Below are positions 691 through 55,885 of a stretch of 64,000 bases of DNA, one piece after another. The DNA is from Mobula birostris (Eukaryota). Both the position numbers and the translations under genes were made by a program. The DNA is taken from NCBI RefSeq assembly GCF_030028105.1, contig NC_092401.1, forward strand, positions 7,908,984 to 7,972,983, given 5' to 3'. Each line of letters opens with the position of its first letter. Within the stretch, counting starts at the first letter, position 1. The notes under the pieces are model-generated. The model saw nothing but the letters and a program-made list of their open reading frames with translations. It ran no database searches and was not told the DNA's origin.

Positions 691-1105
691 GTCGCTCCTG
701 TACTAGTCTTGTTTTTCCAGGCGCTTTGGTTTCCTTCCACAGTCCAAACAAATACCGATGGTAGAGTCATTCTAAATTGTCCAAACACACACCGGTGGTA
801 CAGTCATTGTAAATTGTCCAAACACATACTGGTGGTAGAGTCATTCTAAGTTGTCCAAACGCATACTGGTGGTACAGTCATTGTAAATTGTCCAAACACA
901 CACCGGTGGTACAGTCATTGTAAATTGTCCAAACGCATACTGGTGGTAGAGTCATTGTAAATTGTCCAAACACACACCGGTGCTAGGGTAATTGGTCATT
1001 GTAAATTGTCCCATGATTAGTCTGGAGTTAAATTGGGGGTTGCTGTATGGTGTGGCTCGAAGGCCTTAAAGGACTACTCCACACTGTATCTCAATCAATA
1101 AATAT
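691..1105 (+). mobile_element. 5'-truncated tRNA-derived V-domain SINE with internal tandem amplification
   Basis: ggtttccttccacagtccaaac core and ctgtatctcaatcaataaat tail match the other SINE copies in the window. Confidence 0.7.
744..1010 (+). repeat. 37-bp minisatellite, about 7 copies
   Basis: Unit ccaaacacacaccggtggtacagtcattgtaaattgt read directly in tandem. Confidence 0.9.
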
Positions 1106-1474: not shown

Positions 1475-1944
1475 CTAGAACATAGACATAGACATCTACA
1501 GCACGTTACAGGCCATTTGGCCCACAATGTTATGCCAACCATTTAACCTAGTCTAGAAACTGCCTAGAATTTCCTACCACATAACCCTCTACTTTTCTAA
1601 GCTCCGTGTACATATCTAAGAGGCTCTTAAAAGACCCTGTTGTATCAGCTTCCACCACGGCCGCTGGCAGTGCATTCCACACACCCATCACTCTGTGTGG
1701 AAAAACTTACCCCTGACAACCCCCCTGTAGCTACTTCCAAGCACCTTAAAACTACGTCCTGTTGTGTTAGCCATTTCAGCCCTGGAGAAAGCCTCTGGAT
1801 GTCCATATGATCAATGCCTCTCACCATCTTATTCACCTCTATCAAGTCACCTCTCATCCTCCACCGCTCCAAGGAGAAAAGGCAAGTTCACTCAATCTAT
1901 TCTCATATGGCATGCTCTCCAATCCAGGCAACATCCTTGTGAAT
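1475..1944 (-). mobile_element. CR1 LINE 3' end (continues at 5018)
   Basis: ORF 1645-1872 RMRGDLIEV..., CR1 tail; interrupted by the LTR element at 1945. Confidence 0.85.
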
Positions 1945-2553
1945 TGTCATGATCCAGTCCATAAAGCCCACATTCTGGTTCACAGTCCGGTCCGTCGTTA
2001 CCTTATTTCGGGGTTTTCCTATTTTCCCTTGTTCCATTGGGTGCCTTAATTGAGGCACCTGATTCTCATCATGGGCTGGCACATAAATATCTCTCAAACG
2101 AAGGATTTTCTGCTGGACTGTTCCCTTCCCCATCCCCAACAGTTACCTCACCTGCCACTTTGTCAGAATCCTTGTCAAGTATCCTCGGCAGTCATCCCAG
2201 CCCTGCGTCCTAAAAAGGGTCCTGGCCCTGCATCCTGGAAAGTATCCCAGCCCTGCATCCTAGAAGAGTCCTGGTGTCTCTGAGCCCAAGTAGGAGTCCG
2301 GGCTCTGTACCCTAGAGCCTAACTCAGCCAAGTCCAAGGGCCGAGCCAAATCTAGTTCAAGAACCACGTCCTGTGCTGGAGTCTCCTCGTCCTGTGCTGA
2401 AGTTCCCTGGCCCAGCCCAAGAGTTCCCTTGCCCAGCCTTGTGCTGGAGATCCCTCGTCCAGTCCAGGAGTCTCTCATCTAGTCCAAGCCACGTCCAAGT
2501 ACCACGTCAGGTCCCAGTCCAGGCTTTGTATTCCCAGTACTATCTAGTGTCTA

Positions 2554-3648
2554 TGTCATGGTCCAGTCCATGAAGTCCGTATTCCGGTTCAAGGTCCGGT
2601 CCATCGACCCTTGCTCTAGGTTTTCCTATCTACCCTGTTTCTGTCCTTGTTGAGCTAATTGAGGCAGCTGATGCTCGTTGGGACTGGCTGCATAAATACC
2701 TCCAGAGACCAGGGCGTGGCTGCTGGATTGTTCTTGTTTTTACTCCTTGGATCCCTTCCTCTGCCTTCTGTTTCCTCGCCTGAAGCCCTGCCTTGTCTTG
2801 CCGGTAACTCTCGCCTCACCTGAAGTTCTTGTCTTGCCTTGCTTTGCCTGTAGCCTTGACTTGTCTTGCTGTCTGGTCCTGGAGCCACCCTATACCTAGC
2901 TCCCTTTCTGTCCCTTGCCTCCGCCCAGGTAGACCAGGCCGTCTTGCCGTTACCTGGGGTTGGTTCTGTCCCTTCCTGTCGCTTGCCCCTGTCAGGTGGT
3001 GAACCGCGCCCTGCCCAGGAGTACCGCGCCCTGCCCAGGAGTACCGCGCCCTGCCCAAGAGTACTGCGCCCTGCCCAGGAGAACCGCGCCCTGCCCAGGA
3101 AGAGCCAAGCCTCGCCTCAAGTCTCAAGTCTCCAGCCTCCTGCCAAGCCTCACCTCGCCTCGTCTCCTGCCTCCAGCCTCCAGCCTCGCCTCACCTCATC
3201 TCCTGCCTCCAGCCTCTAGCCTCGCCTCACCTCACGTCTTCTGCCTCCAGCCTCCTGCCAAGCCTCGCCTCGCCTCAAGTCTTCTGCCTCCAGCCTCCTG
3301 CCAAGCCTCGCCTCGCCTCAAGTCTTCTGCCTCCAGCCTCCTGCCAAGCCTTGCCTTGCCTCGTCTCCTGCCTCCAGCCTCCTGCCAAGCCAAGCCAAGT
3401 CTCTAGCCTCTAGCCTCTTGCCAAGCCAAGCCAAGTCTCTAGCCTCTAGCCTCAAGCTTCAAGCCTGTAGATTTCTGCCTCATCCTGCCTGCCTGCCAAG
3501 CCTCATCCTTGCCTATTTCTGGGGTCCGAGCTAGAAGCAAGACCCAGGTACTGGGTCCTTGTCCAGTCTCTGGCTTGGAGTCCAAGCCCGGACTCCTAGC
3601 TCTTTTGTCTTGAACTTGGGTCCGTTCCCAGCCACCGCCCTTATGACA
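2554..3648 (+). mobile_element. Solo LTR of a related family nested in the 5' LTR
   Basis: TGTCAT...ATGACA termini; perfect GTCTA TSD at 2549-2553 and 3649-3653; the uninterrupted site is present in the 3' LTR near 4690-4705. Confidence 0.9.
3003..3460 (+). repeat. Tandem arrays inside the nested LTR: 21-bp gagtaccgcgccctgcccagg units, then gcctccagcctcctgccaagcctcgcct-type units
   Basis: Read directly from the sequence. Confidence 0.85.
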
Positions 3649-5017
3649 GTCTAGTCTGTTCCTAGTCCCAAGTCCTAGCCTGGACCTGGGTTCCGAGCGC
3701 GATTCAAGACCCATGTGCCGGGTCCCTGTCCAGTCTCTGGCTCAGAGTCCTAGTCCAAGCTCCTAGTTCCAAGTTCCTTGTCCAGGTCCCACTTTCCTAG
3801 TTTTAGTCCTAGCCCAGGCCCTGTGTCTTTATCTCGTCCAGGGCCGGTGGCCATGGCAGGCATCATTTCTTCCCAACTTCCCTTGCATTCTTGATAATCT
3901 TAAGTCTCGTTCCTAGTACTTCAGTGTCTGTGTCTTGCATCTGGGTCCACTCCCATCACCACCCCTTGTAAAAGAACAGTCCAGTCATACATGGACCCAG
4001 CAACGCAGACAATGTCATTTAATTCTCACCATCCTGGGTTCCCTCCTGTTGAATCCCACCCACCCCCCCACACACACACGCATAGGTCGTCCATAGTCCG
4101 GGAAAGCTTGTTAGGTCGCCAGGAGGATCCCATAGTGGGGGGTGGAGTACTGTCATGGTCTGGTCCCTGAGGTCTGCATTCCAGTTCACGGTCCGGTCCG
4201 TCGACTCCTTATTCCGGGTTTTCCTGTTTTCCCTTGTTCCATTGGGTGCATTAATTGAGGCACCTGATTCTCATTTTGGGCTGGCACATAAATGTCTCTC
4301 AAACCAAGGATCCCCTCCCGGACTGTTCCCTTCCCCTCCCTTCCAAATCCCCGGTGGTTACCTCGCCTGCTACCTTTGTCAAGTATCCTTGGCAGTGACC
4401 TCATCAAATATCCTCAGCAGTTACCTTGGCAAATATCCTGGGCAGTCATCCCGGCCCTGCATCCTGGAAAGCATCCTGGCCCTGCATCCTAGAAGGGTCC
4501 CAGTGGCTCCGAGCCCAAGTAGGAGTCCCAGCTCAGTACCCTAGAGCTTAACCCAGCCAAGTCCAAGAGCCGAGCCAAATCTAGTTCAAGAGCCATGTCC
4601 TGTGCTGGAGTTCCCTCGCCCAGCCCAGGAGTCTCTCGTCTAGTCCAAGCCATGGCCTAGTACCTTGTCCAGTCCCAGTCCAGTACTATCTAGTGTCTAG
4701 TCTGTTCCTAGTCCTGAGTCCTCACCTGGATCCGGGTTCCGAGCCTGATTCAAGACCCATGCCCCAGGTCCCTGTCCAGTCTCTGGCTCAGAATCCTAGT
4801 CCAGGCTCCTAGTTCCAAGTTCCTCGTCCAGATCCCACTTCCCTAGTCTTAGTCCTAGCCTAGGCCCTGTGTCCTTGTCTCATCCAGGGCCTGTGTCCAT
4901 GGCAGGCGTCGTTTCTTCCCGACTTCCCTTGCATTCTTGGTAATCTTAGTCCAGCTCCTAGTCCTTCAGTGTCTGTGTCTTGCATTTGGGTCCACTCCCA
5001 TCACCCCCCTTGTAACA

Positions 5018-5745
5018 TAAATCTCCTCTGCACTCTGTCCATAGCATCCACATCCTTCCTGCAGTGAGGTGACCAGTACTCCAAGTGGGGTCTAATTAAG
5101 GTCTTAGATAAATGCAACATTACCTCACAGCTTTTGAATTCAATCCCATGGTTGATGAAGGTCAACACACCATACGCCTTCTTAACAACACTGTCAACCA
5201 GCACAGTTTTGAGTGTCCTATGGACACGATCCCAAGATTTCTCCGATCCTCCACGTTGCCAAGAGTCTTACCATTAATATACTATATTCTGTCTTCAAAG
5301 TTGACCTACCAAAATGAACCACCTCACACTTATCTGGCTTGAACTCCACCTGCCACTTCTCAGCCCAGTTCTGCATCCTATTGGTGTCCCACTGTAACCT
5401 CCGACAATCCTTCAGACTATCCACAACACCCCCAGCTTTCGTGGCATCAGCAAACTTACTAACCCACCCTTCTACTTCCTCATCCAGGCCATTTATAGAA
5501 ATCACAAAGAGGAGGGGCCCCAGAACAGATCCCTGCAAAACTCCTCTGATCATCGACCTTCATGCAGAATACGAACCATCTACAACCACTTTGCCTTCTG
5601 TGGGCAAGCCAATTCTCAATCCACAAAGCAAGGTCTCCTTGGATCCCATGCCTGCTTACTTTCTGAATTAACCTCACATGGGGAAGTTTATCAAATGCCT
5701 TACTGAAATCCATATATATGATATCCACTGCTCTGCCTTCATCAG
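5018..5745 (-). mobile_element. CR1 LINE RT region, continuation of 1475-1944
   Basis: ORFs [31 protein letters not shown]; joins 1944 seamlessly once the insertion is removed. Confidence 0.9.
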
Positions 5746-6773: not shown

Positions 6774-7650
6774 GTTACAGAGCTCCATAATCAAGTTCGC
6801 AGACGACACCACGGTTGTTGGCCTGATCAGAAGGAATGACGAGACGGCCTACAGGTCCGGCACCTGGCCGAGTGGTGTACCGACAACAACCTGGCCCAAA
6901 GAGATCATTGTGAACTGCAGGCATGCTAGGAGCCACACTCACGACCCCCATCTACATCAACTGAACTGTAGTAGAGCACGTATCAAGCTTCAAATTCCTT
7001 GGTGTCCACATTTCCGAGGATCTCACCTTGTCCCTGAGCTCCTCCATCCTGATCAAAAAGACACAACAGCGCCTTTATTTCCTGCGGAGCATCAAGAAAG
7101 CTCACCTCTCTCCCAGGATACTGACGGACTTTTACCGCTGTACCATTGAGAGCATGCTCACCAACTGCATCTCAGTGTGGTATGGCAATTGTCCCGTATC
7201 GGACCGCAAAGCACTCCAGCATGTGGTGAAAACTGCCCAGTGGATTATCCGCACCCAATTGCCCACCATTGAGAACATCTACCATAAACGCTGTCTGGGC
7301 AGGGCGATAAGCATTATCAAGGATGCATCTCACCCTAACCATGGACTCTTTACTCTCCTCCCATCTGGTAGGTGCTATAGGAGCCTCCGCTCCAGCACCA
7401 GAAGACACAAGAAGAGCTTCTTCCTTGAGGCTGTGACATTGCTCAACCTCGCATCACAGCGCTAAGCAGTATTGCATCCATATTGCACTGTCTCAGTACT
7501 TGTGTGCTGTAGCACTTACTTTTTATTCGCAGTTATGTTGTGAATAACACTATTCTTTGCATTTCTGGTCAGATGCTAACTGCATTTCATTGGCTTTGTA
7601 TCTGTACTCGACACAATAACAAGAAAGTTGAATCCAATCTAATCTAATCT
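6774..7650 (+). mobile_element. Rex1/Babar-type LINE 3' part
   Basis: IIKFADDTTVVGLI; ORF 7028-7465 KKTQQRLYFLR...; (aatct)n tail. Confidence 0.85.
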
Positions 7651-8691
7651 ATTTAATGCAGGCCCTTTGGACCACAATGTTGTGCCAACTTTTAAACTAC
7701 TCCCCAATCAATCTAACCCTTCCCTCCTACACAGAACATAACCCTCCATTTTTGCTTTCATCCAAGTTTTTAGCGAAGAGATATGGGGAGAATTCCCGAA
7801 GGATGAATGTCTTGATTGAGATCATCTTACTCTAATGCACAAAATGTTTTTTTATTGACTTCCTGGAAAGTCAGATCCAGTTTCTGTATTTACTACATAG
7901 TTATGTATTGTGGTGCATCTGGCAAAGGATGAGATTAAACAGCGTCTCCCATGAAAGAAGCCCAAACTCAATCACAGACTGAATTCAGATCTTCCTCTTT
8001 AGAATCAGAATCTGAATTCAATATCACTGCCATATAGTGCGTCATGAAGTTTGGTGTTTTGTGGTAATAAATAAAAAACTATAAATTACAATAAGAAATA
8101 GTCGTATACGTAAAAAGATGAATTTAATGCAAAAAGAGAGCAAAAAAAAAGTGAGATATTATTCATGGGTTCATTCATTGTCCAGTTGTGCATATATGCA
8201 GTTCAGATCAGAGGTGATCCCTACAATCACAATAAAGTCCAAAATATATTACCGCTTGGAGTTTACTATCAGAAAACTATTTACTATCAGCCCCAGTGCA
8301 AAAGTGTCCTGTATAAAAACAAACTGAGCATCACATTCCTTGTCAGGAATAGCATTTCAGTCCCAGTGCTCATGTCTCGGAATAAAGCACAGTCTCACCG
8401 TTAGTTATTGGTTAAAAATCCCAATCCTCACAACCAGCAAACAGAAACTGAAAGACCACAAGATGCACCCTCCCACTTCTGAACATCTTGCACAATTTAC
8501 ACAGCAGTCCTTGTGCACAATTTACACACAGTACTTCCACAGTTTCAGCAATGCTCTTCCCCACCAACAGTGAGTTGCTCCTCTTCTCCGGTCTGCAGGT
8601 TCTAGACTGCAGCCAAGTTTGAGACTTCGGTGCTTCCTCAAACCTCTGCTATGCTCCTATCAACAAAGTTTTGAACTTACTTCTGTGTGTA

Positions 8692-8939: not shown

Positions 8940-9480
8940 GGATCATAGTGTGTAATTATAGCATCTGATGTCACCATTTCCTTTACCTTTTTGAAAGCCA
9001 CCTCACACTGCTTTGTCCACTGCCATTTCTACTCGATCTATAGTAATGAGTTCAAGAGGTGGAGCAGGTTTGGCAGGAACCTATTATAGTCACTTACAAA
9101 TCCTAAAAAGGACTGCAGCTGTGACACGTCTTTTGGCCTTGGGCCATCCATCACTGCTTAAATTTTCTCAGTGCACTTGTGTAATCCTTGTGCATCAGTT
9201 GTGTGGCCACAGTAAGTGATGCTTGGTTTAAAGAACTCACACTTGTCGCGACACGCTCTGAGCTTTTAACACTGTTTTGAGGCTTTGGAGATGTTCCTTG
9301 TCATCCTTGCCTGTAACAATGATGTCATCCAGGTAACACTGAGCGCCTGGGCAGCCTTGCAGAACCTGGCCCATAGCTTTCTGCCAGCGTGCAGGTGCAG
9401 ATATCACTCTGTTATAGCGATAAAGCCCTTTGTCAGTGGTTATGCTGAGAAACACTCTGGACTTTCTCCATCTGGGAGCC
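8940..9480 (-). mobile_element. Gypsy/Ty3 pol fragment (RT and connection), degenerate
   Basis: KGLYRYNR...QCYLDDIIVTG, then DKCEFFKPSITYCGH, QLQSFLGFV, EMVTSDAIITHYDP. Confidence 0.85.
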
Positions 9481-10299
9481 AAAGACATTGATAAAACAAA
9501 GATGAAAATTCTGCTAAGAAACATGAGCAGCTAATGATGAATTGGAAAAGCAGAACTTGACGACAAGGAGAATGATTTTGGAGGAGAGAATGCATGGTGC
9601 AAAGATTGCTGTGGGAGAAATATCTTCCAGTTCATGGGACACCAATACTAGGAAAGAGGGAAGTGTCACATTGGTGCTTTCACTTGAAATTGGCCAGGGC
9701 CAGAGACTAAGTAAATTAAATATCTGTGGCTTAAAACTGATCATCAGGGATTGGGATTGGAGGCATGGACAGGGGAGGAGTGGGGTGAAGAGAAACTTTA
9801 AAAGTTAAAGGACCAAGCAATAGTGTAGGTGAACAAAATGGGTAAAGACCAGCTGAATGCATCAGGAAGGGACAGAGAGGTGTAACTCCAGTGAGAATTC
9901 ATGAAGCAAAGATAAACTTGAAGGTTCTTTACGTGAAGAAATAGCAGAATAACCAAAAGCAAAAGGGCACAATCAAATAACCATTTCATAGTTGGGTTGT
10001 AACATGGCCAAGGATGGGAATGAAGTATTTGTGTTTACTTTTAGAAGTGACAGACAAATGGAAATGGAATTGGGCAGCAATGGTTTCAAAGGATGGGACA
10101 AAGACAGTAAAGGGAAAAAATGTTGCTCAGAAAATCAAATAGCATATTGGGCTTTAAATAGTTCTCATCATGTGGGTGGGGTATAAAATTCATGAGATTA
10201 GAAGTGTGTGTAACTAGAAAAACACAATAACTGTACGAGACAAGAAGCTGCATACAGGCTGGGCAAACCAATCAGCAGCAATAGTGTGCAGGACAAATT

Positions 10300-11585
10300 T
10301 AGATTAGATTAGATTAGGTTCAACTTTATTGTCATTGTGCCGAGTACAGATACAAAGCCAAGGAAATGCGTTTAGCATTTGACCAGAAATGCAAAGAATA
10401 GTGTTATTTACAAAATAACTGTGAATAAAAAAGTGCCACAGCACACAAATATAAAAGTACTGAGACAGTACAATATTGGTGCTATACTGCTTAGTGCTGT
10501 GATGAGAGGTTCAGCAGTGTCACAGCCTCAGGGAAGAAGCTCTTCTTGTGCCTGCTGGTGCGGGAGCGGAGGCTCCTGTAGCGCCTACCAGATGGGAGGA
10601 GAGTAAAAAATCCATGGTTAGGGTGAGATGCATCCTTGATAATGCTTATCACCCTGCCCAGGCAGTGCTTATGGTAGATGTTCTCAATGGTGGGCAATTA
10701 GGTGCCGATAACCTGCTGGGCAGTTTTCACCAAATGCAGGGTGCTTTGCGGTCCAATACAGGACAATTGCCATACCATACCGAGATGCAGTTGGTGAGTA
10801 TGCTCTCAATGGTACAGCGGTAAAAGTTCGTCAGTATCCTGGGATAGAGGTGAGCTTTCTTGATGCTCCGCAGGAAATAAAGACGCTGTTACACCTTTTT
10901 GATCAGGATGGAGGAGTTCAGGGACCAAGTGAGATCCTCAGAAATGTGGACACCATGGAATTTGAAGCTTGATACACGTTCCACTACAGTTCCGTTCATG
11001 TAGATGGGGACGTGAGTGTGACTCCTGGCATGCCTGAAGTCCACAATCATCTCCTTGGTCTTCTGGGTGTTAAGGGCCAGGTTGTTGTCGATCAGGTGCT
11101 GGACCTCATCCCTGTAAGTCGTCTCGTCATCCCCTCTGATCAGACCAACCACTGTGGTGCCGTCTGCGAACTTGATTATGGAGTTAGAACCATGTACAGG
11201 AATGCAGTCATAGGTGAAAAGGGAGTACAGAAGAGGGCTCAGCACACGGCGTTGAGCCACGCCGGTGTTCAGGGTGAGAGTGGAGGAGGAGAGGTTGTCT
11301 AACTTCACTGATTGGGGTCTGTTAGTCAGAAAGTCCAAGGTCCAATTGCAGAGGGATACGCTGATACCAAGCTGGCGAAGTTTGGCGATCAGCTTGGAGG
11401 GGATCACAGTATTGAATGCCGAACTAAAGTCAATAAACTGTATTCTGACGTAAGAGTTGGGGCTGTCCAGATGGGTCAGGGCAGAGTGAAGTGCTGTGGA
11501 GATGGCATCCTCTGTTGACCTGCTGGTGCGATAGGCAAATTAATGGGGGCCCAGGGTAGAGGGCAGACAGGATTTCAGACATGAT
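10300..11585 (-). mobile_element. Rex1/Babar-type LINE 3' part
   Basis: ORF 10889-11407 ([10 protein letters not shown]...[14 protein letters not shown]); tail identical in type to 7650. Confidence 0.9.
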
Positions 11586-11624: not shown

Positions 11625-11909
11625 TTTTTTTGATGAGATACAGTGCAGACAAGGCCCATCAGTCTCTTTGAGCCACACTGCCCAACAATCCCCTGATTTA
11701 ATCCCAGCCTAATCACGGGACAATTTACAATAACTAATAAGTTGATGAACCAATGCATCTTTGGACTTTGGGAGGAAACCAGAGCACCCAGAAGAAACCC
11801 ATGTGGTCACGGGAAAAATACAAACTCCTTACAGGCAGGGGCAGGAATTGAACCTGCGACGCCTGTACTGTAAAGCATTGTGCTAACCACTATGCTACCG
11901 TGCCACCCC
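11625..11909 (-). mobile_element. tRNA-derived V-domain SINE (HE1-like)
   Basis: Reverse complement has A box, B box gttcaattcc and cc(a)aagtccaaag core. Confidence 0.85.
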
Positions 11910-29689: not shown

Positions 29690-30840
29690 TAGAATAGAAA
29701 TATAGAAAACGTACAGCACAATACAGGCCCTTCGACTGACAAAGCTGTGCCAAATATGTCCCTACCTTAGAACTACCGAGGCTTACCCATAGCCTTCTAT
29801 TTTTCTAAGCTCCATGTATCCATCCAGGAGTCTCTTAAAAGACCCTATCGTTTCCGCCTCCACCACCACCAGCGGCAGCCCATTCCACGCCCTCACCACT
29901 CTCTGTGTAAAAAAACTTACCACTGACATCTCCTCTGTACCTACTTCCAAGCACCTTAAGACTATGCCCTCTCATGCTGGCCATTTCAGCCCTAGGAAAA
30001 AGCCTCTGACTATCCACACGATCAATGCCTCTCATTATATTGTACACCGCTATCAGGTCACTTCTCATCCTCCGTCGCTCCAAGGAGAAAAGGCCAAGTT
30101 CATTCAACCAGATGTTCCTCAATCCAGGCAACATTCTTGTAAATCTTCTGTGCACCCTTTATAGGGTTTCCATGTCTTTCATATAGTGAGGCGACCAGAA
30201 CTGAGCGCAGCACTCCAAGTGTGGTCTGACCAGGGTCTGATATAGCTGCAACATTACCTCTCGGCTCTTAAACTCAATCCCACGATTGATGAAGGCCAAT
30301 ACACCACATGCCTTCCTAACCACAGAGTCAACCTGTGTAGCAGTTTTGAGTGTCCTATGGACTCGAACCCCAAGATCCCTCTGATCCCCCACACTGCCAA
30401 GTGTCTTACCACTAATACTATATTCTACCATCATATTTGACCTACCAAAATGAACCACCTGATACTTATCTGGGTTGAACTCCATCTGCCACTTCTCAGC
30501 CCAGCCTTGCATCCTATCAGTGTCCCGCTGTAACCTCTGACAGCCCTCCGCATTATCTACAATATCCCCAACCTTTGCATCATCAGCAAATTTACTAACT
30601 TATCCCTCCACTTCCTCATCCAGGTCATTTATAAAAATCACAAAGAGTAGGGGTCCCAGAACAGATCCCTGAGGTACACCACTGGTCACCGGCCTCCATG
30701 CAGAATATAACCCGTCTACAACCACTCTTTGCCTTCTGTGGGCAAGACAGTTCTGGATCCACAAAGCAATGTCCCCTTGGATCCCATGCCTCCTTACTTT
30801 CTCAATAAGCCTTGCATGGGGTGCCTTATCAAACGCCTTG
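29690..30840 (-). mobile_element. CR1 LINE RT to 3' end
   Basis: ORFs 29835-30155, 30159-30512, 30600-30926 ([18 protein letters not shown]). Confidence 0.9.
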
Positions 30841-35826: not shown

Positions 35827-36430
35827 CAGAAATCCCCCGCTTTTTGAATGTTCGCTTTACGATACCTTGCTGTTACGAAAGACCTACATGAGTTACCTGT
35901 TTTTGCTAACAGAAGGTGTTTTCACTATTACAAAAAAAGGCAGCACGCGAAAAAGCAGCCGCTCTCCCCCAGATTAGGAATGGCATTCTAGCTGGCATTG
36001 CTTAAACACATGCCTGTGAGCATCCGTTTGCAAGATGCGTTCTAAGGTATCACAGAAGTCTAAAAGAGCTTGTAAGGGTGTTACACTTAGCGTAAAACTA
36101 GGCATAATTAAGCGTGTCGATCGTGGTGAACGAAGCAAGGACAAAGTGAGTTTGGCTTATGGAAGTTGACGAAGATGATGTTGAAGAGGTTTTGGCATCC
36201 CATGACCAAGAACTGATAGATGAAGAGCTGAAGTAATTGGAAGAGGAAAGGATAACAAACGAAACTGAATGCAGTAGTGTACGGACTGAAAGTGAAGTCA
36301 TCCAGGAACTGAACGTGAAACAACTGCGTGAGATTTTCACAGCAATAATTGCAGAAAAGTACAACTTTAATTTTGAAAGGGTACGTTGGTTTAGGGCATA
36401 TTTGCAAGTTGGTTTGAGTCCTTACAAAGA
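35827..36430 (+). mobile_element. Tigger/pogo-type internally deleted DNA transposon
   Basis: TA|cagaaatcccc start; N-terminal remnant fused to acidic C-terminal EVDEDDVEEVLASHDQEL. Confidence 0.7.
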
Positions 36431-36990
36431 ACTGTATGATAGCTGCGTGGTCCCATGGTGTTTTATACTTGCGTACTATTGTTTGCACAGATGAATGTGG
36501 TACCTTCAGGTGTTTGGAAATTGCTCCCAAGGATAAACCAGACTTGACATCATTTTCTGACCTCAATCTGATAGAAAATTTGTGGGCAGAACTGAAAAAG
36601 CGTGTGCGAGCAAGGAGGCCTACAAACCTGACTCAGTTACACCAGTTCTGTCTGGAGAAATGGAACAAAATTCCAGCAACTTACTGTGAGAAGCTTGTGG
36701 AAAGCTACCCAAAACGTTTGACCCAAGTTAAACAATTTAAAGGCAATGCTACCAAATACTAACAAAGTGTATGTTAACTTCTAACACACTGGGAAATTGA
36801 TGAAAGAAATAAAAGCTGAAATAAATCATCCTCTCTACTATTATTCTGACATTTCACATTCTTAAAGTAAAGTAGTGATCCTAACTGACATAAGACAGGG
36901 AATGTTTTCTAGGATTAAGTGTCAGGAATTGTGAAAAACTGAATTTAAATGTATTTGGCTAAGATGTATGTAAATTTCTGACTTCAACTG
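36430..36990 (+). mobile_element. Sleeping Beauty-like Tc1 remnant: inverted N-terminal piece plus C-terminus and right TIR
   Basis: Minus strand KSGLSLGAISKHLKVPHSSVQTIVRKYK; plus strand DLNLIENLWAELKKRVRARRPTNLTQLHQFC; ends tgtatgtaaatttctgacttcaactg|TA. Confidence 0.85.
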
Positions 36991-55261: not shown

Positions 55262-55885
55262 ATTAGATTAGATTATGAAGACACGCAGTCCTCTTTTATT
55301 GTCATTTAGTAATGCATGCATTAAGAAGTGATACAATATTTCCTCCGGTGTGATATCACAAAAACACAGGACAAACCAAGACTGAAAAAACTAACAAAAC
55401 CACATAATTATAACATATAGTTACAACAGTGCAACAATACCATAACTTGATGAAGAACAGTCCAGGGCACAGTAAGTTCAAAGTCTCTCAAATGTCCCAC
55501 ATCTCACATAGATGGGAGAAGGAAAAAAAACTCTCCCTGCCATGCCCGACCACAGTCCGACTCTGAGTCATCCGAAAACTTCGAGCCTCCGAATCAGCCT
55601 CCGACACCGAGTACCGAGCGCCATCTCTGTCCGAACGATTCCACCTCAATCTCGGTTGCCAACAGCAGGCAAAGCCGGGGATTTTGAGGCCTTCCCTCCG
55701 GAAGAGTCTCAATCACGCAGTAACAACAGCAGCGAACCTGCGTTTCAGAAATTTCTCCAGCTGTTCCTCTGTGCTTTCACGTCTGTCTCCATCAAATCAG
55801 AATTGTCCACGGCCCCTATTTAACGGATACAATATAATTTTCACCGGAGGGCTGCGTGATCAACGCGCTGCTATCTCCTCCTCCC
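55262..55885 (-). mobile_element. Non-coding CpG-rich retroposon-like repeat with (aatct)n tail
   Basis: Reverse complement ends gacaataaaagagg...taatctaatctaat; no tRNA head or RT motif seen. Confidence 0.55.

What the first reader, a model, noticed from the sequence alone, without database searches (positions are those of the whole stretch)
2113..3984. Exact 11-nt Tf1-type self-priming signature
Seen: no tRNA-type TGG PBS follows the 5' LTR. Instead GAACAGTCCAG (3974-3984) is the exact reverse complement of CTGGACTGTTC (2113-2123), which lies 31 nt after a CATAAATA TATA-like box. The motif recurs at the same spacing in the 3' LTR (CCGGACTGTTC, 4318-4328) and in the nested LTR (CTGGATTGTTC, 2723-2733). 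Established: S. pombe Tf1 primes reverse transcription by pairing the first 11 nt of its mRNA with the sequence just 3' of the 5' LTR, and this is proposed for Tf1/sushi-group chromoviruses. Inference: two related self-priming LTR families here, with the transcription start predicted at about 2113.
Basis: partly seen in the sequence, partly recalled or inferred. Interest (0 to 1): 0.75.

Follow-up and report, generated by a model that had tools for sequence, protein, structure and literature searches.

The report
Self-priming signature in dead mini-retrotransposon
An old, protein-less LTR retrotransposon in this vertebrate genome (earlier scan notes say a ray) has no tRNA primer site; the 11 bases after its left repeat match its own predicted transcript start, as in the known yeast Tf1 and fish sushi elements, so it is a real but ordinary new example.

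Summary
CTGGACTGTTC (2113-2123) is the exact reverse complement of GAACAGTCCAG (3974-3984). That 11-mer begins at the first base after the 5' LTR.

The locus is one old integration (1945-5017) with a 5-bp target duplication inside a CR1-like LINE:
- The 5' LTR (1945-3973) is split by a nested solo LTR of a related family (2554-3647, duplication GTCTA).
- The 3' LTR is 4151-5017.

A match this long arises by chance at about 0.002. It also starts 31 nt after a TATA-like box kept in all three LTR copies, which makes chance unlikely. No TGG lies in the 18 nt after the LTR. A two-strand fold pairs the two 11-mers in its minimum-energy structure. A strong U5-leader stem brackets the PBS.

This fits Tf1/sushi-type self-priming, already proposed for vertebrate elements. 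Three things remain untested:
- co-variation: the nested LTR has no PBS and no other copy could be fetched;
- the transcription start;
- chromovirus membership: there is no pol.

The scan has already reported the same kind of signature on other DNA of this genome. Verdict: new member of a known kind, modest interest.

The parts
1940..1944 (+). Left copy of the 5-bp target-site duplication (TGAAT) in a CR1-like LINE
   Evidence: The uninterrupted paralogous LINE copy near 30140-30160 reads ...CTTGTAAATCTTCT..., so TAAAT was duplicated; the left copy has one A-to-G change.
1945..3973 (+). 5' LTR of the outer element (TGTCATG...TTGTAAAA), interrupted by a nested solo LTR
   Evidence: BLAST and alignment against the 3' LTR give 86-90% identity and K2P 0.11-0.16.
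2082..2089 (+). TATA-like box CATAAATA, 31 nt before the motif
   Evidence: CATAAAT is invariant in all three LTR copies.
2113..2123 (+). Putative self-primer, the predicted first 11 nt of the transcript: CTGGACTGTTC
   Evidence: Exact reverse complement of 3974-3984. The two are paired in the minimum-energy two-strand fold. The 11-mer duplex is -17.7 kcal/mol.
2549..2553 (+). Left target duplication (GTCTA) of the nested solo LTR
   Evidence: GTCTA occurs on both sides at 2549-2553 and 3648-3652. The 3' LTR has a single GTCTA at the homologous place.
2554..3647 (+). Nested solo LTR of a related family (TGTCATGG...TTATGACA, 1094 nt). It has its own TATA (2691-2698), the motif CTGGATTGTTC (2723-2733), and tandem arrays of 20 nt (2998-3117) and about 43 nt (3075-3465).
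   Evidence: Its U3 is 74-76% identical to the outer LTRs and its last 150 nt or so are homologous to outer U5.
3648..3652 (+). Right target duplication (GTCTA) of the nested solo LTR
3921..3950 (+). U5 arm of the U5-leader stem
   Evidence: Pairs with 3991-4015 at -30.6 kcal/mol; 0 of 300 shuffles did as well. The local fold of 3925-4015 has z = -3.0. The arm differs at 1 base from the 3' LTR copy.
3974..3984 (+). Primer-binding site GAACAGTCCAG, flush with the end of the 5' LTR
3974..4150 (+). Internal stub of 177 nt: PBS, leader, ATG at 3991, a C/CA-rich junction and a purine tract. It has no protein domain.
   Evidence: No Pfam hit for the stub or LTR ORFs. No copy elsewhere in the window.
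3991..4015 (+). Leader arm of the U5-leader stem, just 3' of the PBS
4134..4147 (+). Polypurine-like tract AGTGGGGGGTGGAG, 3 nt before the 3' LTR
   Evidence: Read directly from the sequence.
4151..5017 (+). 3' LTR (867 nt, TGTCATGG...TTGTAACA), with TATA-like box at 4287-4294 and motif variant CCGGACTGTTC at 4318-4328
5018..5022 (+). Right copy of the 5-bp target-site duplication (TAAAT)

Best explanation
This is the fossil of a non-autonomous LTR retrotransposon: two 0.87-kb LTRs around a 177-nt non-coding stub. It primed its own reverse transcription in the way Tf1 does.

Proposed mechanism:
1. Transcription starts about 31 nt after the LTR's TATA-like box, at or next to 2113.
2. The first 11 nt of the RNA fold back over roughly 0.85 kb of R-U5 onto the 11-nt PBS that directly follows the 5' LTR.
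3. A U5-leader stem brackets the PBS and holds it in a loop.
4. The RNase H of a partner element's reverse transcriptase would cut after nt 11, and the freed 3' end primes minus-strand DNA.

Shown here: the exact complementarity, its position flush with the LTR, the conserved TATA spacing, the lack of a tRNA-type PBS, the predicted pairings, and the single integration event with a 5-bp duplication. Inferred: the start site, the cleavage, the partner supplied in trans, and that the partner is a Tf1/sushi chromovirus.

The copy is long dead. Its LTRs are 11-16% diverged and the 5' LTR is split by a later solo-LTR insertion.
For: - Exact 11/11 complement, with chance about 0.002.
- The window holds 7 near-matches of the pattern against 1.8 expected.
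- The PBS starts at the first base after the LTR.
- The motif starts 31, 31 and 32 nt after an invariant CATAAAT in the three LTR copies.
- There is no similarity beyond the 11-mer, so this is not a decayed inverted duplication.
- The global minimum-energy fold of the two natural strands 2113-2553 and 3653-4060 pairs 2113-2123 with 3974-3984.
- A U5-leader stem encloses the PBS loop: -30.6 kcal/mol, 0 of 300 shuffles as good; local z = -3.0. It crosses the primer-PBS duplex, as does one side duplex of the three-duplex 'pretzel' described for Tf1/sushi RNAs (PMC10085805).
- No TGG lies in the 18 nt after the LTR.
- The termini are TG...CA and the target duplication is 5 bp, confirmed against an empty paralogous site.
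- Literature: in Tf1 the first 11 bases pair with the PBS and RNase H cuts between bases 11 and 12 (PMC7175516). The mechanism is proposed for vertebrate Tf1/sushi elements (PMC6317226, PMC4600332).
Against: - This is a single copy, so no co-variation could be tested.
- There is no RNA evidence for the start site, and C at +1 after G is not a typical initiator.
- The 3' LTR copy of the motif has a C at position 2, which would give a C-A mismatch. Either this is a later change or the present perfect match arose through two CpG transitions.
- The second side duplex (3838-3860 with 3950-3969) is strong with the 5' LTR letters at -19.9 kcal/mol, but only at background level (-12.3) with the 3' LTR letters.
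- No AAUAAA-type poly(A) signal lies anywhere in R-U5, so the extent of R is unknown.
- The primer and the PBS are about 0.85 kb apart, far more than I recall for Tf1's short 5' leader (from memory; no figure was read here).
- There is no pol, and no autonomous partner was found.
Confidence: 0.7

Rival explanations
1. The complementarity is a coincidence. The element was primed by something else, such as an internal tRNA fragment or another cellular RNA, and the 11-mer match has no function.
For: There is only one copy. A post hoc search across many LTR elements in a large genome will meet some matches at the 1e-3 level. An identical 11-mer lies in unrelated DNA at 55455. The 3' LTR motif differs at one base.
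Against: The match sits exactly at the canonical PBS position and exactly at TATA+31, for a joint chance of about 1e-5 by my arithmetic. No TGG lies within 18 nt of the LTR. The first TGG, at 3992, would imply a tRNA 3' end with U rather than the near-invariant C at position 61 (general tRNA knowledge) and is part of the leader stem. The only tRNA-like sequence in the window, a SINE head at 11833-11904, does not match.
Confidence: 0.12
2. The 5'-end-to-PBS pairing is real but serves another purpose, such as packaging, dimerisation or translational control, while priming uses an unidentified primer.
For: Long-range 5' UTR structures around the PBS are common in retroelements. The U5-leader stem is also found in tRNA-primed retroviruses, so it does not discriminate between the two.
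Against: There is no alternative PBS candidate in the loop 3950-3991. The length of 11 nt and the flush position equal the experimentally established Tf1 arrangement (PMC7175516).
Confidence: 0.08
3. Self-priming is right, but the element does not belong to the Tf1/sushi chromovirus clade. Its partner is another lineage that evolved self-priming independently, as proposed for the plant Ty1/copia TAR lineage.
For: No pol, chromodomain or gag is present. Self-priming is predicted outside Tf1/sushi (PMC6317226). The only Ty3/gypsy-like RT fragment in the window (9237-9524, minus strand) is unrelated in position and carries no LTR of this family.
Against: In vertebrates, the papers read here propose self-priming only for the Tf1/sushi group (PMC6317226, PMC10085805). 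The 5-bp duplication and TG...CA ends fit Ty3/gypsy. The fish Sushi LTR model has its AAUAAA signal unusually close to the LTR's 3' end (PMC3601003), which fits the long stretch after the TATA box here.
Confidence: 0.1

Closest known systems
Tf1 and Tf2 of Schizosaccharomyces pombe (and Tj1, Tosmo, Tcry1): experimentally established self-primed LTR retrotransposons
   Same: The PBS follows the 5' LTR and is complementary to 11 nt of the element's own transcript start. There is no tRNA PBS. [quoted passage not shown] The target duplication is 5 bp (the Tf1 figure is from memory) and the ends are TG...CA.
   Different: This element has no coding capacity. About 0.85 kb separates its primer from its PBS. 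Only one of the two side duplexes is convincing. The host is a vertebrate. There is no experimental evidence for it.
Vertebrate Tf1/sushi-group chromoviruses (sushi-ichi and relatives; Butler et al. 2001, cited in PMC4600332, PMC6317226 and PMC10085805; that paper was not readable here)
   Same: Vertebrate host, a proposed self-priming PBS, and an early TATA followed by a long downstream LTR portion (Sushi LTR model, PMC3601003).
   Different: Those are autonomous gag-pol elements with a chromodomain and a clear AATAAA in the LTR. This element has no pol and no AAUAAA-type signal. Clade membership could not be tested.
TRIM and LARD-type non-autonomous LTR retrotransposons
   Same: Two LTRs around a short non-coding core with a PBS and a purine tract, presumably mobilised in trans.
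   Different: TRIMs are under 1 kb, with 100-250 bp repeats and a tRNA-complementary PBS (PMC6934838). Here the LTRs are 867 nt, the element is about 1.9 kb (1945-5017 without the nested insert), and the PBS is self-complementary.
Earlier findings of this scan on other DNA of the same genome (s1-145316 and others)
   Same: Protein-less two-LTR elements of about 2.1-2.5 kb whose post-LTR 11-12 nt match a site about 30 nt after the LTR's TATA box.
   Different: Those are AI notes that I did not check. Sequence look-ups found no recorded look-alike of this copy, so whether it is the same family is unknown.

Membership tests
Tf1-type self-priming LTR elements (mechanistic class) | A PBS directly 3' of the 5' LTR that is complementary to a sequence inside the LTR | tested here: met
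   3974-3984 is the exact reverse complement of 2113-2123 and is flush with the LTR end at 3973.
Tf1-type self-priming LTR elements (mechanistic class) | The complementary sequence is the very 5' end of the mRNA | tested here: inconclusive
   The motif begins 31 nt after a conserved TATA-like box. No transcript data exist.
Tf1-type self-priming LTR elements (mechanistic class) | No PBS complementary to a tRNA 3' end | tested here: met
   No TGG lies in 3974-3991. The TGG at 3992 is 18 nt from the LTR, lies in a stem, and implies a non-tRNA-like T arm. No vertebrate tRNA library was available, so tRNA halves are not excluded.
Tf1-type self-priming LTR elements (mechanistic class) | A three-duplex 'pretzel' RNA structure (PMC10085805) | tested here: inconclusive
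   The central duplex appears in the minimum-energy fold. The downstream side duplex is strong. The upstream side duplex depends on which LTR's letters are used. With a single copy there is no co-variation.
Tf1-type self-priming LTR elements (mechanistic class) | RNase H cleavage between nt 11 and 12 creates the primer | not testable with these tools
   This needs biochemistry. Only the 11-nt length agrees (PMC7175516).
Tf1-type self-priming LTR elements (mechanistic class) | Primer and PBS co-vary among copies and subfamilies | not testable with these tools
   There is no second copy with a PBS in the window. The metagenome scan gave only a chance hit. Protein routes were blank.
Tf1/sushi clade of chromoviruses (Ty3/gypsy, Metaviridae) | RT and integrase phylogeny, and an integrase chromodomain | not testable with these tools
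   The element has no pol.
Tf1/sushi clade of chromoviruses (Ty3/gypsy, Metaviridae) | TG...CA LTR termini and a 5-bp target duplication (these fit the Ty3/gypsy superfamily but are not specific to it) | tested here: met
   The ends are TGTCATG...TTGTAACA. The duplication TAAAT is verified against an empty paralogous site. The nested LTR has duplication GTCTA.
TRIM (terminal-repeat retrotransposon in miniature) | Under 1 kb in total, repeats of 100-250 bp, tRNA-complementary PBS (PMC6934838) | tested here: not met
   The LTR is 867 nt, the element is about 1.9 kb (1945-5017 without the nested insert), and the PBS is not of tRNA type.

The most novel reading that the evidence does not exclude
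Cartilaginous-fish genomes may hold a diversified radiation of protein-less LTR elements that keep Tf1-type self-priming across an unusually long R-U5 of about 0.85 kb. Related families would share a U3 and self-primer module and a U5-end and PBS module around unrelated, repeat-expanded cores. That would be a natural vertebrate system in which primer-PBS co-evolution and trans-mobilisation by a sushi-like partner can be read directly from genome copies.
Probability: 0.3. Interest if true: 0.45.

Novelty: new member of a known kind. Interest (0 to 1): 0.3.

Why it matters
Self-priming is a rare way to start reverse transcription. It has been proven only in fission-yeast elements and inferred elsewhere from sequence. 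This copy adds a clean vertebrate example in a non-autonomous element, with the primer and the PBS far apart. If many copies exist, as earlier notes of this scan suggest, their primer-PBS pairs offer a cheap co-variation test of the mechanism and a handle for finding the autonomous partner. The copy itself is dead and changes no general view.

Tried and rejected
- **Other copies in the window.** BLAST of both LTRs and the stub found only the element itself. The extra exact 11-mer at 55455 sits in unrelated sequence.
- **Public DNA.** One metagenome scan with a conserved U3 pattern returned one AT-rich chance match, L001.
- **Protein route to more copies or to a partner.**
  - The 129-aa ORF that runs from the LTR's ATG gave no word-search hit and no exact record.
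  - The 152-aa frame covering the stub's 3' end plus U3 gave 0 hits among 1.84 billion representatives.
  - Pfam found nothing on the stub or LTR ORFs.
  - These ORFs are best read as non-coding.
- **Pol-tail idea.** I recalled that the stub's last codons resemble the C-terminal tail of fish Tf2-like pol proteins. This is memory only and could not be tested, so it is not used.
- **Six-frame motif scan for sushi-type pol remnants.** It found only a Ty3/gypsy-like RT fragment at 9237-9524 (minus strand), unrelated to this element.
- **tRNA priming.** ARAGORN found no tRNA gene. Rfam found only a tRNA-like SINE head. Neither fits the PBS.
- **Motif conservation between the two LTR families.** 10/11 is not significant against the 74-76% background (my binomial estimate is about 0.2).
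- **Original Tf1 papers.** They are not held in the library, so reviews and later papers were cited instead.
- **Steps deliberately left out.** The long-range fold used the two natural pieces as separate strands.
Full report
**Observation**

2113-2123 reads CTGGACTGTTC and 3974-3984 reads GAACAGTCCAG, its exact reverse complement. The 3' LTR carries CCGGACTGTTC at 4318-4328 and the nested LTR carries CTGGATTGTTC at 2723-2733.

The match ends sharply on both sides. A 12th pair between 2112 and 3985 would be a G-U wobble.

The TATA-like box CATAAAT starts 31 nt upstream of the motif in both outer LTRs and 32 nt upstream in the nested LTR. The spacing is therefore nearly identical, not exactly so.

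**Anatomy**

- The outer element runs from 1945 to 5017.
- Its 3' LTR is 4151-5017: 867 nt, from TGTCATGG to TTGTAACA.
- Its 5' LTR is 1945-3973 and is split by a 1094-nt solo LTR (2554-3647, TGTCATGG...TTATGACA). That insertion is flanked by a GTCTA duplication, which is single at the homologous place in the 3' LTR.
- The internal part is only 177 nt (3974-4150). It holds the 11-mer flush with the LTR, an ATG at 3991, a C/CA-rich stretch and a purine tract (4134-4147) 3 nt before the 3' LTR.
- It encodes nothing recognisable.
- The whole element sits in a CR1-like LINE. An uninterrupted paralogous LINE copy near 30140-30160 shows the empty site and a 5-bp duplication TAAAT, with one later change in the left copy. 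So this is one integration event, not two unrelated LTRs.
- The two LTRs differ by K2P 0.11-0.16, with many CpG-context changes. I infer that the copy is tens of millions of years old and inactive.

The nested LTR is related to the outer LTRs in two regions. Its first 180 nt or so, from the start of U3 through the motif, are 74-76% identical. Its last 150 nt or so, including the final 40 nt of U5, are also homologous. Its middle differs and holds 20-nt and roughly 43-nt tandem arrays.

**Is it more than chance?**

- In 20000 shuffles of the 2029-nt 5' LTR, an exact complement of 11 nt or more to the sequence starting 0-5 nt after the LTR appeared at a frequency of 0.0018.
- The empirical rate for unrelated window 11-mers is 8.8e-4.
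- The match also starts where a TATA-driven transcript is expected to start. That is a further factor of roughly 0.005, by my arithmetic and post hoc.
- The sequence beyond the 11-mer shows no similarity, which argues against a decayed inverted duplication.

**Priming alternatives**

There is no TGG in the 18 nt after the LTR. The first TGG, at 3992, lies inside a stem. Read as a tRNA complement, it would require U at tRNA position 61, where C is nearly invariant (general knowledge).

The window holds no tRNA gene. Its only tRNA-like sequence is a SINE head that does not match. A tRNA-half or other cellular primer cannot be excluded without a host tRNA set.

**RNA structure**

I folded two natural pieces as separate strands, without joining them: 2113-2553 (the predicted transcript start up to the nested insertion) and 3653-4060 (the rest of U5 plus the leader). 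The global minimum-energy structure pairs 2113-2123 with 3974-3984 base for base. The 11-bp duplex alone is -17.7 kcal/mol.

Locally, 3921-3950 in U5 pairs with 3991-4015 just after the PBS. This stem is -30.6 kcal/mol, and 0 of 300 shuffles did as well. The fold of 3925-4015 has z = -3.0. The stem places the LTR end and the PBS in a loop of about 42 nt.

This stem crosses the primer-PBS duplex. So does one of the two side duplexes of the three-duplex 'pretzel' reported for Tf1/sushi RNAs (PMC10085805).

A candidate for the other side duplex (3838-3860 with 3950-3969) scores -19.9 kcal/mol with the 5' LTR letters. With the 3' LTR letters it scores only -12.3, which is background. I treat it as weak.

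A U5-leader stem also occurs in tRNA-primed retroviruses. It supports the location of the PBS, not the kind of primer.

**Which letters are ancestral?**

The 5' LTR and the PBS agree on CTGG/CCAG, while the 3' LTR has CCGG. There are two possible histories:
- one T-to-C change in the 3' LTR, or
- two CpG transitions, one in the 5' LTR and one in the PBS.

The first is more parsimonious and agrees with CTGG in the nested family. Under either history the ancestral pair was fully complementary (inference).

**Comparison with what is known**

- The mechanism is regarded as common to the Tf1/sushi group, including vertebrate members (PMC10085805, PMC6317226, PMC4600332).
- It is also predicted for some other lineages (PMC6317226).
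- The fish Sushi LTR model has an AT-rich stretch that could serve as a TATA box, and an AATAAA motif unusually close to the LTR's 3' end (PMC3601003).

Here U3 is about 167 nt and the part after the TATA box is about 700 nt. No AAUAAA-type hexamer occurs anywhere in R-U5, and this remains unexplained.

The element works like a Tf1/sushi element. Clade membership cannot be tested because it has no pol and I could not reach an autonomous partner. It is not a TRIM in the strict sense (PMC6934838).

**What could not be done**

None is in the window. The one metagenome scan gave a chance hit only. The protein-based routes were blank.
- The nested LTR is a solo LTR, so 'two self-priming families' rests on one family with a PBS and one without.

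**Earlier scan notes**

The scan has already reported the same kind of signature on other DNA of this genome. Several first-reader notes and one follow-up (s1-145316) describe abundant protein-less two-LTR elements whose post-LTR 12 nt match a site 30 nt after the TATA box. I treat these as unchecked leads. Other notes call the host a manta ray or cartilaginous fish, which I did not verify.

**Verdict**

Self-priming is the best explanation for the outer element, at about 0.7. The mechanism and its presence in vertebrates are already known, so this is a new member of a known kind, of modest interest.

Noticed in passing
window 4318-5017 and 2113-2553, 3653-3973: No AAUAAA-type poly(A) hexamer occurs anywhere in the predicted R-U5 of either outer LTR or of the nested LTR. 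The only CATAAA is the TATA-like box itself. Where transcripts ended, and how long R is, is unexplained.
   Followed up: partly
window 2998-3117 and 3075-3465: Inside the nested solo LTR there are five 20-nt tandem units followed by about nine units of roughly 43 nt. Repeat expansion accounts for much of this LTR's length.
   Followed up: no
window 705-1037: A 37-nt tandem repeat with about nine units. Its end (991-1039) is an inverted match of 11690-11738, next to a tRNA-like SINE head.
   Followed up: no
window 11833-11904 (-): An Rfam tRNA match (32.5 bits) that ARAGORN does not call. It looks like the tRNA-derived head of a SINE.
   Followed up: partly
window 9237-9524 (-), extending to about 8900: A degenerate Ty3/gypsy-like reverse-transcriptase fragment (YLDDIIV motif, weak RVT_1 hit). 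It lies between two LINE fragments in inverted orientation (6783-7651 and 10300-11183, 91% complementary). One LINE ORF hits ALKBH8_N and another hits RVT_1.
   Followed up: partly
window 4155-4544 (+): A 129-codon open frame starts at the ATG inside the LTR's first bases (TGTCATGG) and runs through U3 into R. It has no relatives in any protein search, so it is probably non-coding.
   Followed up: yes
window 36108-36566 (-): An ORF with a Sleeping Beauty transposase HTH domain (just below the Pfam cut-off), a Tc1/mariner remnant.
   Followed up: no
window 55455-55465: A second exact GAACAGTCCAG in unrelated, A-rich sequence. I take it for a chance match.
   Followed up: partly
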